Below, piece after piece: positions 28,432 to 34,047 of a stretch of DNA of 64,000 nt (its first letter is position 1; every line of letters starts with the position of its first letter). The notes below the pieces were generated by a model. The model did not search any database. It was not told the DNA's origin and saw nothing but the letters and a program-made list of their open reading frames with translations. Made by a program: the position numbers and the translations under genes. This DNA is from Haliotis rubra (taxonomy: Eukaryota): the NCBI RefSeq assembly GCF_003918875.1, contig NW_025766962.1, positions 1,116,001 to 1,180,000 of the forward strand, in the 5' to 3' direction.

Positions 28432-28603
28432 TTATGAGCACTGATACGTCTTGCACGTGCAGGCTGTTGGCATTAGCATGGTTACCTTGGTGATCCTTTC
28501 ACCGTAGGCCAACCCAGCACAGTACGCCCACACCCCTGTCTGTCTGTAGCTGGCCTCACAACGGCTAATTGTACCATAGCTTGCTTTGGCCGAACACCCA
28601 TGT
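28432..28603 (-). CDS. Spaetzle-like cystine-knot precursor, last exon
   Basis: Acceptor TTTTCAG, phase 2; HGCSAKASYGTISRCEASYRQTGVWAYCAG...MLMPTACTCKTYQCS*. Confidence 0.8.
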
Positions 28604-29102
28604 CTGAAAAATGACAAAATACCTTCAGCTTCTATATACATACAAAAGAAAACACTTGTTTGATTGGTCGGTTTATAAAGAAACTGCTAATTATATAAAT
28701 TATTCAGCTACACTCTATCTGTCTAGATCCTACTGGCTTTGCTATACACTGGTTGGTGTGATCAGTCATCTAAATTTCACATCTTTCTACAATTTCACCA
28801 AAAAGGCCTCTTCCAGATAAACAATATTTCCCTGCGTTCAATAAATGTTAGGGATCTAATTAAGTCAGATCTTTAATTTCAATACAACTCTGTCTACGTT
28901 CTCATCAGACTCCACTTCCAGTTCGTGTTAGGTAAAAAAGTGGAAACCTAGATTTCTCACTAGCTCAACTTGAGTGCCAAATCTCCCTCACTAACTTGGA
29001 ACACACTGATTTTCATACAAAACCATGTCTGTACAAGTATGGCCCTGGAATGTTTAATGCTGCATTTCTTTTATGAATGTGAAGACCAAAGCCAACACCA
29101 AC

Positions 29103-29234
29103 CCGCAGTTGTAGAAGCTGACGTCTTGGTACACGGGGTTGATGACCCAGCAGTAGTTGTTGTAGGAGTAGAAGCGTCTCAAGGTCAGGGACTGTCCTTG
29201 GCAGCCATCAGAGTAGGCTGCTTGACGTTTAAAT
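29103..29234 (-). CDS. Spaetzle-like precursor, exon with RFKR site and start of the cystine knot
   Basis: 132-nt phase 2-2 exon; (R)FKRQAAYSDGCQGQ..YCWVINPVYQDVSFYNCG. Confidence 0.75.
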
Positions 29235-29553
29235 CTGTAATTGTGAACACCCAAGTTGAGACGGAAGGTTGTAGTGTAATATGGATATGAAATATTTACA
29301 CAAGATATTCATGCAAATGAAGTTCGTCGAGACATATGTTGGCCTATGAGACTCTAAAAATCAATTCGCATAAGGTTAGATGAGAATTTCTTACCTCTGT
29401 CGCTGTCTTCCAAACATCTAAAACCTGTATTTGCACACTTAACCATTCATCGGAATAAGCTAAACTGGCATGCACATGTATCTGGAAATGTGCATCATAT
29501 ATATTTGTTCTTTTTTATTATTACTTTCTCGTTAGGAACAAACACAAGCATAC

Positions 29554-29679
29554 CTTTGTCCATGTATGGCCATGTGTGGCTGGAGGTTGTATTTACCCCT
29601 GAATCGACCACCAGTTCCTAAATCAAATATGGCGGCTCTGATCTTTGGTCGTTGCTCAAGTTCGAAGATGATATCATGT
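29554..29679 (-). CDS. Spaetzle-like precursor, prodomain exon
   Basis: 126-nt phase 2-2 exon, TTTTCAG...AG|GTATGC, open frame HDIIFELEQRPKIRAAIFDLG...HGQ. Confidence 0.7.
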
Positions 29680-30044
29680 CTGAAAATTAAGTACAATCAA
29701 TAGCTGCAGCTGGGCATTAACAATCAAGTCTGGAACAGATAATCACTGGATTATCTGGACTGAGACAAAGATGACAAAGAATCAAAATAAAACCATAATG
29801 AACTTCTTTTTAAGCGCAATAACTCTGCAAAGATAACAAGAGAGAAAGGAAAAACTAAGTGAAATATACGAATGCTGTTGAACATTAACATTCTATAGAT
29901 AAATGTGGGTAGTAGTGTGTTCGGCCTCTTCGTGGTATTCCAGCCGAATCAAACTATGGTACCCTAGGTTAACGCGTCACGCACTGGACCCATGTCAGGT
30001 GTATCAGAGCTGCGAAGATGAATACAGCGAGGTGTTTCACTTAC

Positions 30045-30781
30045 TTTGGGTAGCTGTAAGACAAGTGAGAGAACTGATACAGAACATAAGGCTCTGGCTG
30101 GAGGCCGCACTTGAGGATAGCAGCGTTGACAACAGGGGCTGAAACAACAGCGGTCTTTAGACTAGGAGACGTTGTCAGGGCGCTGGATGAAGCGGAGAAC
30201 GGCTCGGGAAAATCTGGATGTGGCATAGCAGGGAAGTCGGGTTTAAGGGAAGCTGCGCTAGGTATAATGTCCTTGACAATACCAGAAGCTGGAGGAGCTT
30301 TGGGAAATGTGGAGGCTGGTAAAACGTCATGGACGATAATGTTTGAGCTTGGGACGACGTCATGAACAACGTTTTCGGAAAATGATTTAGGTATGATGTT
30401 ATGGATGACGTCGTGAACGATAGCATCAGATCCGGATTCAGGTACAACGTCGCGAACAACGTCTACCACATCAGATGATAAACCTGTGACAACATCTACC
30501 ACACCACTATTGCCGGGATCGGGAACAACATCTTTTACAACGCTGTTTGACTGTGGATCGTGGACAATGTGGATACCGTCACCACCATGGACATCGACAG
30601 GGTCTTTAATAAAGTCGCCATTTCCACCTACAGCGGAGTGATCAGGCACAACGTCGATGACATCACCTGGATTCGGTCCAAAATGTCCCAAGTCTCTAGG
30701 ATGAATCTGGGAAGACACGATTCCAACGAGGACAGACACCAGTAGAACGTATGCCTGCAACAGTTTAGGGATAACAATCAT
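30045..30781 (-). CDS. Spaetzle-like precursor, signal peptide and Asp/Val/His/Pro-rich repeat prodomain exon
   Basis: Hydrophobic signal AYVLLVSVLVGIVSS; repeated (V/I)V(H/K/R)D(V/I)(V/I)P units; strong donor AA|GTAAGT at 30045. Start is the ATG at 30781 or an upstream mini-exon via TTGCAG. Confidence 0.7.
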
Positions 30782-32732: not shown

Positions 32733-32996
32733 ATGACAAAACGTCGCACGCTGTTGCTTCTCAACGCAGATACAGTTTGTCGTGGATCCTTACCAAACTA
32801 AATAAAACAACTAGTTTAACCCAAACCCAACAATGTCTTAGCAAAGTATATCATGTAGCAAAAAATAGATATGTCCTACAGATGTACTAAAAACGGAAAA
32901 CCCTGAAAGAAATTTCACACTACTGGCATTGATTAGTAACAGTGTTTAACTTTTTCCTAGGCAAAGGAACATGTTTAAAAGGTGCGTAACCATTCC

Positions 32997-33300
32997 AAAC
33001 ACTGTTGCGATAATATACGAAGTACGAGTGGAAAGTGTGTTATACAAACGTCACACATCACATTACTTACAAACACTGTTGCGATAATATACGAAGTACG
33101 AGTGGAAAGTATGTTATACAAACGTCACACATCACATTACTTACAAACACTGTTGCGATAATATACGAAGTACGAGTGGAAAGTATGTTATACAAACGTC
33201 ACACATCACATTACTTACAAACATTGTTGCGATCATATACGAAGTACGAGTGGAAAGTGTGTTATACAAACGTCACACATCACATTACTTACAAACATTG
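32997..33300. repeat. 74-bp tandem repeat x4
   Basis: Unit AAACACTGTTGCGATAATATACGAAGTACGAGTGGAAAG...CACATTACTTAC. Confidence 0.95.
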
Positions 33301-34047
33301 TGGTTGTGGGGACACCTCCAGCCCAAGCCTCCACCTGAAACAGCGCGGTTCGGTCAAATGACTGTGGGTCAACGTGAAACTTAACCCACCAGACACCATA
33401 TAACGGTTCATTAGATGTGGGCCAGGAGTGAAATATACAATGATTATACCGCCATCATAAACACCTACGGTCAGCCATGCTCCCCGCAGAGGACATATTC
33501 ACTGCACCATTGCACGACTATAGAGAGTTTTTAAGAGAGCCTTAATCCAAGCTGGACCCAATCTCTGTTTATTGAGTAAATGCTATAATGACTCTTAAAA
33601 AGGGTTTTATTGCTATCACACGGTTCTGATGTCGCGGGTATTTAAATTTATAAATTAGTCTTTGTAGCCTTAATTTGCATATTTTCACACAGTTGCCTTT
33701 CATTATCCATTTAATGCATAATGAATTCTAAACTGTATTGTGATGCTTTTATAAACTAACTGTCTCTAACTATATTGTGTCGAGTTACGAGATGCAACAC
33801 AAAATTTCATTGGTGAATCAGCCTAGTTGTTGAATATGAAGTCTGTGTTACGTCCTATTGATCAATATGAACACCTTGAGTGTATCGTCAATCTGCCCAT
33901 ACCAGAGACCATATAATAGATTATATGGTCCCTGCCCATACCAAGTCACAGTCATGAAACGTATCAGTCAGTGTAGTTTCTTTGTTGTGCTCCAGGTAGG
34001 GATGTCACTGACCTATGGTTGTGGATCCGAATCCAAATCTCGCTCAA

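What the first reader, a model, noticed from the sequence alone, without database searches (positions are those of the whole stretch)
28432..30781. Hidden four-exon Spaetzle-like cystine-knot cytokine precursor with an RFKR processing site
Seen: four phase-2-linked exons give a signal peptide, a ~270-aa prodomain and Q-RFKR. The mature part reads QAAYSDGCQGQSLTLRRFYSYNNYCWVINPVYQDVSFYNCGHGCSAKASYGTISRCEASYRQTGVWAYCAGLAYGERITKVTMLMPTACTCKTYQCS. Known: the C...Q-x-V...C..C...C...Y...P-x-x-C-x-C spacing is that of Spaetzle/NGF-type cystine knots, and RxKR is a furin site. Inference: a mollusc Toll-ligand or neurotrophin-like factor activated by a proprotein convertase. Its nine cysteines leave one free, possibly for dimerisation.
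Basis: partly seen in the sequence, partly recalled or inferred. Interest (0 to 1): 0.7.

Follow-up and report, generated by a model that had tools for sequence, protein, structure and literature searches.

The report
Abalone secreted cystine-knot pro-protein gene
This is a real, conserved abalone gene for a secreted precursor whose C-terminal 97 residues fold like nerve-growth-factor/Spaetzle-type cystine-knot signalling proteins. It belongs to a little-studied snail-only gene family, and its receptor and role remain untested.

Summary
The four exons, their GT-AG junctions and the 388-aa reading frame are exactly as described. RefSeq models in Haliotis asinina, H. rufescens and H. cracherodii ('uncharacterized protein') are colinear across all three junctions. 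dN/dS is 0.12-0.42 in every exon.

The gene is therefore real, but it is not 'hidden'. It probably has a fifth exon: a 6-nt coding micro-exon (ATGTTT|GTAAGT at 33298) conserved in three species.

The post-RFKR peptide (modelled on the H. asinina orthologue with a 21-sequence alignment, pLDDT 86.5) folds as a cystine-knot growth factor. Neurotrophins are the best solved matches (VIA Z 6.8). Gremlin, VWF-CTCK and sclerostin are tied with them, and Spaetzle scores only Z 4.6.

Pfam Spaetzle, NGF and IL17 models do not hit this protein or any of 26 relatives. It belongs to a gastropod-only family with at least 12 loci in this genome and a shared intron inside the knot. The family has 9 or 10 cysteines and a conserved upstream module (C-x17/18-YP-x3-I-x2-EL).

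The Rx[K/R]R site lies in a predicted disordered linker. It is conserved in Haliotis and present in 9 of 21 family members.

A Toll-ligand or neurotrophin role is untested, and no RNA data were available. This is a new member of a known kind, of moderate interest.

The parts
33293..33298 (-). Probable first coding micro-exon ATGTTT (Met-Phe), followed by donor GTAAGT. The 5' UTR start is unknown. The surrounding region 33269-33598 is conserved.
   Evidence: The H. rufescens RefSeq model starts with ATGTTT|GTAAGT and then splices to ttgcag|GCATAC. The same 12-mer is present in the window at 33298 and in H. asinina L021:4259. It lies inside 80-83% identical stretches of 330-431 nt.
30045..30781 (-). 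The alternative is the acceptor at 30755/30754, making the exon 30754-30045.
   Evidence: There are eight [VI][VI]xD[VI][VI] motifs. The hydrophobic core is residues 7-22, ending ...IVSS|Q. dN/dS is 0.27-0.37.
29554..29679 (-). 42-codon exon holding the second half of the N-module (HDIIFELEQRPKIRAAIF) and the start of the linker. It ends in the split Arg codon of RFKR.
   Evidence: The exon is 88-90% identical at protein level between species, with dN/dS 0.17-0.20. The helices have pLDDT 84-89.
29225..29234 (-). RFKR dibasic (furin-type) site. R288 is completed by base 29234, and F-K-R is coded by 29233-29225. The predicted cut is before Gln292 (29224-29222).
   Evidence: The orthologues read RLRR and RFRR. 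Rx[KR]R lies 11-23 residues before the first knot cysteine in 9 of 21 relatives. The site falls in a linker segment with pLDDT below 50.
29103..29224 (-). First half of the mature cystine-knot domain (Q292 to the split Gly codon, cysteines 1-3).
   Evidence: The intron at this domain position is shared by the paralogous loci.
28432..28603 (-). Second half of the mature cystine-knot domain (cysteines 4-9, ...ACTCKTYQCS) and the stop codon TAA at 28434-28432.
   Evidence: dN/dS is 0.12-0.26.
30045..30109 (-). Start of the conserved N-module, from invariant Cys225 to ...SYSYP. It continues at 29679-29625 in the next exon.
   Evidence: The alignment A4 has C, Y-P, I and E-L invariant or nearly so. 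The motif is found in most of the full-length relatives.

Best explanation
This is an expressed-type, conserved Haliotis gene for a secreted pro-protein. It is one member (the 9-cysteine orthogroup) of a gastropod-restricted multigene family whose C-terminal ~100 residues adopt the cystine-knot growth-factor fold, nearest to neurotrophins/Spaetzle. The proposed mechanism has five steps. (1) A signal peptide directs the protein into the secretory pathway (inferred from sequence). (2) The knot domain folds with four intrachain disulfides and leaves one cysteine unpaired. From cysteine spacing, that cysteine is probably the penultimate residue, whose partner in the 10-Cys paralogues has been lost (inferred). 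(3) A furin-like proprotein convertase cuts after RFKR in a disordered linker. This releases or unmasks a 97-aa ligand beginning with Gln (inferred from the conserved motif and predicted disorder). (4) The conserved helical N-module with its invariant cysteine acts as a folding or latency element. It may stay attached to the knot (hypothesis). (5) The product acts extracellularly as a ligand, probably dimeric, for a receptor not yet identified. Shown here: the gene structure, conservation, family, fold and motif conservation. Inferred: cleavage, disulfide map, dimerisation and signalling role.
For: Gene model and junctions. Colinear orthologues. Purifying selection in all exons, omega 0.12-0.42. 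Family of 26 representatives at E<=1e-3, with every credible member a gastropod. At least 12 paralogous loci in this genome share the intron position inside the knot domain. The 9-Cys clade has 98/96 support and spans Haliotis, Gigantopelta, Pomacea, Elysia and Plakobranchus. The AF2 model has pLDDT 86.5. In Foldseek the top 35 solved hits are all neurotrophins (E 7e-3, TM 0.53-0.58). In VIA the top 35 are all cystine-knot factors, with NGF at Z 6.8, rmsd 3.1 and 87 residues aligned. ESM-Atlas features give Spaetzle/NGF clusters at 0.90 (194/256), with Spaetzle-5 at TM 0.65. Atlas shape search gives Spaetzle 0.64, SOSTDC1 0.63 and NT-4 0.59. The Rx[KR]R site is conserved in three Haliotis species and 9 of 21 relatives, often followed by Gln. 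The site lies in a segment with pLDDT below 50, while the N-module is ordered (pLDDT 84-89, whole-model pTM 0.71).
Against: No RNA or protein evidence was obtainable for this genome. No sequence-level link to any named cystine-knot family was found: Pfam was blank at E<=10 and the PDB sequence and profile searches were blank. Structural scores are middling (Z below 8), and the NGF, Gremlin, CTCK and sclerostin rows are statistically tied. Twelve of 21 relatives lack an Rx[KR]R site, so cleavage is not a family-wide requirement. The homodimer prediction gave no verdict. Disulfide connectivity could not be read, because model coordinates are not exposed. The structures were modelled on the H. 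asinina orthologue (86-88% identical in this domain), not on the window's own joined product.
Confidence: 0.7

Rival explanations
1. It is a true Spaetzle-family orthologue, meaning an endogenous ligand of a molluscan Toll/TLR that is activated by proteolysis.
For: Protein-language-model neighbours are mostly Spaetzle clusters: 13 of 30 hits, top score 0.90. The predicted-structure neighbour Spaetzle-5 has TM 0.65 and a Spaetzle cluster has TM 0.64. UniProt auto-names several relatives 'Spaetzle domain-containing protein'. The architecture of signal peptide, pro-region, basic cleavage site and C-terminal knot matches.
Against: PF16077 gives no hit at E<=10 on the exons, orthologues or relatives' domains, and none over its cut-off anywhere in this genome. 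Solved Spaetzle ranks 13th (Z 4.6, rmsd 7.0) and Spz1C scores Z 2.8. Other relatives are auto-named 'TGF-beta profile' or 'Bursicon', so these automatic labels are unstable. From general knowledge, canonical Spaetzle is cut extracellularly by a clip-domain protease after a single Arg, not at a furin site. No Toll-binding evidence exists.
Confidence: 0.15
2. It is a coagulogen-like two-chain protein. After cleavage in the linker, the N-module stays disulfide-tethered to the knot through its invariant cysteine and the knot's 'odd' ninth cysteine. The active species is then not a free 97-aa peptide. This partly overlaps the best explanation.
For: The N-module cysteine is invariant. In the 9-Cys clade the total after the signal peptide is 10, an even number. 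AF2 places an ordered helical N-module with whole-model pTM 0.71. Coagulogen is the solved structure that aligns over the whole N-module plus knot (114 residues, model 9-168, Z 4.5), and Noggin aligns over 109 residues.
Against: Z 4.5 is tied with many knot-only hits. The 10-Cys paralogues would then have 11 cysteines, so the parity argument does not generalise. No contact or disulfide could be read from the model. Pfam Coagulin does not hit.
Confidence: 0.2
3. It is a DAN/CTCK/sclerostin-type knot with an 8-membered ring (CGHGC plus CTC) and a finger-tip disulfide. It would act as an extracellular antagonist or as a cross-linking secreted component rather than a cytokine.
For: Gremlin-1 at Z 6.0, VWF-CTCK at 5.8, sclerostin at 5.8 (21-23% identity), NBL1 at 5.4 and Norrin at 5.4 are within about 1 Z of NGF. 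The top Atlas shape row is SOSTDC1-like (TM 0.63, rmsd 2.8). In Haliotis the third and fourth cysteines are spaced C-x3-C. The predicted long hairpins put Cys5 opposite the CxC and put Cys2 and Cys6 near the finger tips (inference). Relatives carry long proline-rich, low-complexity regions and occur in tandem arrays.
Against: The C-x3-C spacing is not conserved. It varies from 3 to 7 residues across the family, and there is no CxGxC consensus. From general knowledge, DAN/CTCK proteins lack a pro-region with a convertase site. Pfam DAN, Cys_knot and Sclerostin do not hit. Foldseek ranks 35 neurotrophin chains first.
Confidence: 0.12
4. It is a canonical neurotrophin orthologue acting through Trk/p75.
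For: Neurotrophins are the best solved structural matches. From general knowledge, furin-type processing is typical of pro-neurotrophins.
Against: PF00243 does not hit it. The same genome has a separate locus that does reach the NGF cut-off (C2571:227714-227839, 27.6 bits). hhalign of the family profile against that locus aligns only the CxC (probability 0.8%). The family has 9-10 cysteines rather than 6, and an intron inside the knot.
Confidence: 0.05
5. It is not a functional gene but a chance ORF or pseudogene.
For: No RNA evidence was obtained here.
Against: The frame is intact. Splice sites are conserved in three species, omega is well below 1 in every exon, and the orthogroup is conserved across gastropod subclasses.
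Confidence: 0.02

Closest known systems
Vertebrate and invertebrate neurotrophins (NGF/BDNF/NT-3/NT-4; Pfam PF00243)
   Same: They are the best solved structural match: NGF at Z 6.8, rmsd 3.1 with 87 of 98 residues aligned, and the Foldseek top 35. Both have a signal peptide, a pro-region, an Rx[K/R]R convertase site, a ~100-aa C-terminal knot and a C-terminal CxC.
   Different: There is no PF00243 hit. It has 9-10 cysteines rather than 6, an intron inside the knot domain and a conserved cysteine-bearing N-module. The family is gastropod-only and multi-copy. A separate NGF-type locus exists in the same genome.
Arthropod Spaetzle / DNT family (Pfam PF16077)
   Same: It has the same superfamily fold, is the nearest by language-model features, and shares the pro-protein architecture. 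An odd cysteine count suggests a covalent dimer, as in Spaetzle C106 (general knowledge).
   Different: The PF16077 test failed. Solved Spaetzle scores only Z 4.6. The cleavage motif is furin-type rather than an Easter/SPE-type single Arg.
Horseshoe-crab coagulogen (PDB 1AOC)
   Same: It is one of only two knot-family solved structures that align across both the N-module and the knot (114 residues, Z 4.5); the other is Noggin (109 residues). Both have an N-terminal piece with cysteine, a cleavable linker and an NGF-like knot.
   Different: The score is weak and tied with others. There is no Pfam Coagulin hit, no evidence of clotting-type polymerisation, and the tether is unproven.
DAN/CTCK/sclerostin/Norrin knots
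   Same: Structural scores are comparable (Z 5.4-6.0; TM 0.63), identity to sclerostin is 21-23%, and Haliotis has a C-x3-C plus CxC arrangement.
   Different: The C-x3-C spacing is not conserved in the family. There is a pro-region with a convertase site, and no Pfam DAN or Cys_knot hit.
Paphia undulata 'spatzle homolog' (Yu et al. 2015, cited in PMC7773633)
   Same: As of 2020, that paper described it as the only Spaetzle homologue reported outside arthropods. It is a mollusc.
   Different: It is a bivalve. No bivalve protein appeared among the 26 relatives.

Membership tests
Cystine-knot cytokine/growth-factor superfamily (fold level) | Two long twisted beta-hairpin fingers tied at one end by a CxC-containing knot, with structural similarity to solved members | tested here: met
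   The AF2 model has pLDDT 86.5 with long hairpins at 53-70 and 79-96. The top 35 VIA rows and the top 50 Foldseek rows are all cystine-knot factors. The Atlas shape rows agree.
Cystine-knot cytokine/growth-factor superfamily (fold level) | Three disulfides with one threading the ring formed by the other two | not testable with these tools
   Model coordinates are not exposed. The connectivity was only inferred from spacing and secondary structure.
Spaetzle (Pfam PF16077) | Match to the family HMM at or above the gathering score (27 bits) | tested here: not met
   There was no hit at E<=10 for the four exons, P0001/P0002 or ten relatives' knot domains, and none at E<=1 for 26 relatives. The best genome-wide hit was 19.8 bits, at another locus.
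Spaetzle (Pfam PF16077) | Closest structural similarity to solved Spaetzle | tested here: not met
   3E07 scores Z 4.6 at rmsd 7.0 (rank 13) and 7B1C Spz1C scores Z 2.8, against NGF at Z 6.8.
Spaetzle (Pfam PF16077) | Binds and activates a Toll receptor after proteolytic activation | not testable with these tools
   This needs binding and signalling assays.
Neurotrophin (Pfam PF00243) | Match to the NGF HMM with six conserved cysteines | tested here: not met
   There was no hit. The protein has 9-10 cysteines. A different locus in this genome does reach the cut-off.
Neurotrophin (Pfam PF00243) | Pro-protein with a furin-type site directly before the knot domain | tested here: met
   RFKR, RLRR and RFRR lie 11 residues before the first knot cysteine, in a disordered linker. 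Cleavage itself was not shown.
Interleukin-17 (Pfam PF06083) | Match to the IL17 HMM, and a knot lacking the threading disulfide | tested here: not met
   There was no hit on the protein. The same search found 43 IL17 matches elsewhere in the genome, about 39 of them over the cut-off, which serves as a positive control. Cys1 and Cys5/6 are invariant. IL-17A scores Z 5.6.
DAN / CTCK (Pfam PF03045, PF00007) | Conserved C-x-G-x-C plus C-x-C forming an 8-membered ring | tested here: not met
   The spacing between the third and fourth cysteines varies from 3 to 7 residues across the family with no central Gly consensus. There were no Pfam hits.
TGF-beta (Pfam PF00019) | HMM match, CC pairs and a heel helix between the fingers | tested here: not met
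   There was no Pfam hit. Only a 4-residue helix is predicted. TGF-beta2 scores Z 4.1 and myostatin Z 3.8.
Gastropod 9/10-Cys knot family (defined here, alignments A3 and A4) | Eight invariant cysteines, W before Cys6, P-x2-C-x-C-x4-C at the C-terminus, an upstream C-x17/18-YP-x3-I-x2-EL module, and an intron between Cys3 and Cys4 | tested here: met
   The window's exons carry every invariant residue. Tree placement is in the 9-Cys clade with 98/96 support.

The most novel reading that the evidence does not exclude
The gastropod 9/10-Cys family is the lophotrochozoan counterpart of the Spaetzle/coagulogen lineage. It would be an expanded set of endogenous, protease-activated ligands for molluscan Toll-like receptors, in which the conserved N-module stays disulfide-tethered to the knot as in coagulogen. 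That would show that cytokine-type Toll activation is not confined to arthropods.
Probability: 0.1. Interest if true: 0.75.

Novelty: new member of a known kind. Interest (0 to 1): 0.42.

Why it matters
It is still open whether molluscan Toll/TLR or Trk/p75 pathways use endogenous cystine-knot ligands. A 2009 survey recovered no Spz genes from lophotrochozoan genomes (PMC2772990). A 2020 paper states that only one clam 'spaetzle homolog' had been described outside arthropods, with no link to TLR signalling (PMC7773633).

This locus belongs to a gastropod-wide, multi-copy family with an NGF/Spaetzle-like fold that current Pfam models miss and that databases label inconsistently (Spaetzle, TGF-beta, Bursicon, 'collagen-like', 'osa-like'). 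Defining the family gives a concrete list of candidate ligands, at least 12 of them in abalone, to test against abalone receptors. That is relevant to abalone disease and to the evolution of neurotrophin/Spaetzle signalling. Without functional data it remains one more uncharacterised secreted cystine-knot protein.

Tried and rejected
- **RNA support.** The look-up of sequencing runs listed no RNA run. The three holders (X1-X3) are DNA contigs of a close relative that cover the introns, so they say nothing about splicing. The one joint reported (29022>29554, one contig, side 21) starts in a high-copy repeat and was dismissed.
- **Homodimer prediction.** The job on two copies of the knot domain returned 'no answer'. 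It is not used as evidence either way.
- **PDB sequence searches.** Both the single-sequence and the profile search were blank at E<=10.
- **Word-index protein searches.** Searches with exon 1, with the C-terminal region and with alignment A3 found only the close Haliotis orthologues, one Batillaria protein and one unnamed 100-aa fragment.
- **hhalign against the genome's NGF-type ORF.** Comparing A3 with it aligned only the CxC (probability 0.8%).
- **ESM-Atlas features for the N-module alone.** The scores were at noise level (0.76).
- **Literature.** There was no paper mentioning LOC124137522. The Aplysia immunome paper and a mollusc TLR review do not mention Spaetzle. The limpet mucus paper's 'cystine knots' are mucin CTCK domains and are unrelated.
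- **P0011.** This Mucor protein (eight short stretches) was treated as a low-complexity false hit.
- **Joined model left out.** The joined four-exon product has no reference, so it was never sent to a search, fold or complex tool. Exons were searched by reference, and the orthologues P0001 and P0002 served as full-length proxies.
Full report
**Observation.** On the minus strand, the segments 30781-30045, 29679-29554, 29234-29103 and 28603-28432 join into an uninterrupted 1167-nt frame of 388 codons plus TAA. All three introns are GT-AG, with lengths of 365, 319 and 499 nt, and all junctions are in phase 2. The product has a hydrophobic N-terminus ending ...IVSS|Q and a V/P/S/D-rich region with eight [VI][VI]xD[VI][VI] motifs. 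The joined product was made only inside a local script to check the frame. It has no reference, so it was never sent to a search, fold or complex tool. Exons were searched one by one by reference, and the orthologues served as full-length proxies.

**The gene is real but not hidden.** Exon 1 alone retrieves two annotated proteins: P0001 (Haliotis asinina XP_067664107.1, 378 aa, 79% identity) and P0002 (H. rufescens LOC124137522, XP_046359810.2, 414 aa, 66%). An H. cracherodii protein shares the cluster with P0002. All are named 'uncharacterized protein'. Both read colinearly through all three junctions. Mapping them onto their own genomic loci shows the same exon boundaries and the same donor and acceptor sequences. 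Exon-by-exon Nei-Gojobori estimates give dN/dS of 0.12-0.42 for every exon in all three species pairs. The values are 0.13-0.32 for the knot-coding exons and 0.25-0.35 for the upstream exons.

The window comes from a 1.378-Gb, 2855-contig Haliotis assembly. A second copy on contig C2618 is 98-99.8% identical over 3-3.7 kb and is most simply an unmerged haplotype.

**The 5' end needs revision.**
- The H. rufescens model does not start in the large exon. It begins with a 6-nt coding micro-exon, ATGTTT|GTAAGT, spliced to ttgcag|GCATAC.
- The same acceptor is present in the window at 30755/30754.
- The same 12-mer is present at window 33298 (minus strand) and at H. asinina L021:4259. In each case it lies inside a stretch 80-83% identical over 330-431 nt.
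A genomic contig of another Haliotis (L022) has a stop in that position.
- I therefore favour, at roughly 2:1, a five-exon gene whose product starts MF-AYVLL.... Only the signal peptide is affected.

**A gastropod family.** An exhaustive HMMER search of 1.84 billion cluster representatives used the orthologues' C-terminal 143 residues. It found 26 proteins at E<=1e-3 and 8 at E<=1e-10. Every credible one is a gastropod: Haliotis, Gigantopelta, Pomacea, Lottia, Batillaria, Nucella, Elysia, Plakobranchus or Aplysia. Their source names are a muddle, which shows that no signature captures the family cleanly. The names include 'Spaetzle domain-containing', 'TGF-beta family profile domain-containing', 'Bursicon', 'collagen alpha-2(I)-like', 'proline-rich cell wall protein-like' and 'trithorax osa-like'.

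The domain alignment (A3) has eight invariant cysteines, a W before Cys6 and a P-x2-C-x-C-x4-C ending. Most members have ten cysteines. The window protein falls in a well-supported clade (98/96) of nine-cysteine proteins from Haliotis, Gigantopelta, Pomacea, Elysia and Plakobranchus. Nine cysteines is therefore an old, conserved state and not an accident.

A profile search of the window's own genome finds at least 12 loci, including a tandem array at C1:1.553-1.615 Mb. Nearly all are split into two exon matches at the same domain position, between Cys3 and Cys4.

**Named families by sequence.**
- Pfam finds nothing at E<=10 for the four exons, P0001/P0002 or ten relatives' knot domains, and nothing relevant at E<=1 for 26 full-length relatives.
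- In the whole genome, PF16077 (Spaetzle) has no match over its cut-off.
- PF00243 (NGF) has one match at another locus (27.6 bits).
- PF06083 (IL17) has 43 matches elsewhere, about 39 of them over its cut-off. This is a useful positive control for the six-frame search.
- PDB sequence and profile searches are blank.
- Membership of Spaetzle, NGF or IL-17 as defined by their HMMs is therefore tested and not met.

**Fold.** AlphaFold2 was run on the orthologue's mature peptide with the 21-row alignment. It gives pLDDT 86.5 and pTM 0.67, with short strands followed by two long hairpin strands at 53-70 and 79-96.
- Foldseek against the PDB lists 35 neurotrophin chains first (E 7e-3 to 0.2, TM 0.46-0.58), then sclerostin, VWF-CK, VEGF-C, myostatin, gremlin and IL-17A.
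- The Foldseek-independent aligner gives the following Z-scores: NGF 6.8 (rmsd 3.1, 87 aligned), proNGF 6.6, Gremlin-1 6.0, VWF-CTCK 5.8, sclerostin 5.8, IL-17A 5.6, NBL1 and Norrin 5.4, PTTH 5.2 and Spaetzle 4.6 (rmsd 7.0). The first 35 rows are all cystine-knot factors.
- ESM-Atlas neighbours by language-model features are Spaetzle and NGF clusters (0.90, 194 of 256 features). By shape they are Spaetzle-5 (TM 0.65), a Spaetzle cluster (0.64), SOSTDC1 (0.63) and NT-4 (0.59-0.63).
- The cystine-knot fold is thus well supported. The sub-type is not resolved, because rows within about 1 Z are ties and all Z-scores are below 8.

**Cysteine logic (inference).** The spacing between Cys3 and the next cysteine varies from 3 to 7 residues across the family, with no CxGxC consensus. 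That argues against a strict DAN/TGF-beta-type 8-membered ring, although Haliotis itself has CGHGC.

The predicted hairpin register puts Cys5 opposite the CxC, and Cys2 and Cys6 near the finger tips. In ten-cysteine members a second cysteine follows two residues after the fourth. It is missing throughout the nine-cysteine clade, while the penultimate C-terminal cysteine is invariant. The simplest reading is that this C-terminal cysteine has lost its partner in the window protein. It would then be free for an interchain bond or a bond to the N-module.

**Processing site and N-module.** Rx[K/R]R is conserved in the three Haliotis sequences compared (RFKR in the window, RLRR and RFRR in the orthologues), 11 residues before Cys1. 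It occurs 11-23 residues before Cys1 in 9 of 21 relatives, often followed by Gln. The other 12 lack it.

Upstream lies a second conserved element, C-x17/18-YP-x3-I-x2-EL, with the Cys and the YP invariant and I, E and L nearly so. It is found in most of the full-length relatives, at distances of about 50 to more than 400 residues from the knot.

AF2 of the N-module plus knot (pLDDT 76.5, pTM 0.71) predicts ordered helices for the module (pLDDT 84-89). The linker is disordered (pLDDT below 50 at model positions 50-56 and 65-74), and this disordered stretch contains the dibasic site. With this model, coagulogen (114 residues aligned over model 9-168, Z 4.5) and Noggin (109 residues) are the only knot-family solved structures that align across both parts (the other rows reaching the N-module are weak cystatin-type hits), though their Z-scores are tied with knot-only hits. 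This raises the possibility that the 'prodomain' is not simply discarded. That possibility is unproven.

**Expression.** No RNA run holding this stretch was on offer. The three runs that hold it are DNA contigs of a close relative that cover the introns. The junctions therefore rest on conservation and on the orthologous RefSeq models. The 6-nt first coding exon in the H. rufescens model suggests transcript support, but I could not verify that.

**Literature.** Wilson 2009 (PMC2772990) recovered neurotrophin-like genes, Trk and p75NTR from Lottia and Capitella. Its tBLASTN searches found 'no Spz genes' in lophotrochozoans. Saco et al. 2020 (PMC7773633) state that a spaetzle homologue had been described outside arthropods only in the clam Paphia undulata, with no demonstrated link to TLR signalling. 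I found no paper on this Haliotis gene.

**Verdict.** It is unsupported at the level of 'Spaetzle family member' or 'Toll ligand'. The locus is a new member of a known kind, belonging to a distinct, poorly annotated gastropod family. Interest is moderate, because the family offers concrete candidates for the unresolved question of endogenous Toll or neurotrophin-type ligands in molluscs.

Noticed in passing
window 32996-33301: A 74-bp tandem repeat (4.1 copies, 98% matches) duplicates the putative first coding micro-exon together with its splice donor. Two copies keep ATGTTT|GTAAGT (ATG at 33298 and 33224), and the other two read GTGTTT|GTAAGT. The H. rufescens query piece matched its own locus once, so the array looks specific to this species. 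It could offer alternative first-exon donors.
   Followed up: partly
window 28996-29082 (intron between the two knot exons): This is a short, very high-copy interspersed repeat. Summed contig depth is 11,000-83,000 against about 5-60 for the flanks in three DNA runs, with many loose ends at 29000-29004 and 29058-29067.
   Followed up: no
G000:C2618:30098-35425 (loci L001, L004, L005, L008): There is a second copy of the whole gene, 98.0-99.8% identical including the introns. It is probably an unmerged haplotig rather than a paralogue.
   Followed up: partly
G000:C1:1553855-1614741; also C613:1441268-1472646 and 1728208, C127:255009-255778, C2090:1711312-1711890, C26, C316, C457, C2322: These are paralogous loci of the same 9/10-Cys knot family, including a tandem array of about six genes on C1. 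Nearly all are split by an intron at the same position within the knot domain.
   Followed up: partly
G000:C2571:227714-227839 (L014): This is the only locus in the genome reaching the Pfam NGF cut-off (27.6 bits, profile positions 69-108). It is a candidate canonical molluscan neurotrophin and lies next to a long (CT)n microsatellite.
   Followed up: no
G000 contigs C243, C2706, C2375, C233, C458 and others: The IL-17 repertoire is large: 43 six-frame matches, about 39 over the Pfam cut-off, mostly in tandem clusters.
   Followed up: no
P0013, P0023, P0022, P0025 (relatives in other gastropods): Database names such as 'trithorax group protein osa-like', 'collagen alpha-2(I) chain-like', 'repetitive proline-rich cell wall protein-like' and 'Bursicon' are attached to proteins whose only conserved part is this knot domain. 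The names appear to come from low-complexity regions or marginal signatures.
   Followed up: partly
L021:1-2338 (H. asinina, upstream of the orthologue): The neighbouring gene in H. asinina encodes a VIT/VWA protein (inter-alpha-trypsin-inhibitor-like). Synteny with the window was not examined.
   Followed up: no
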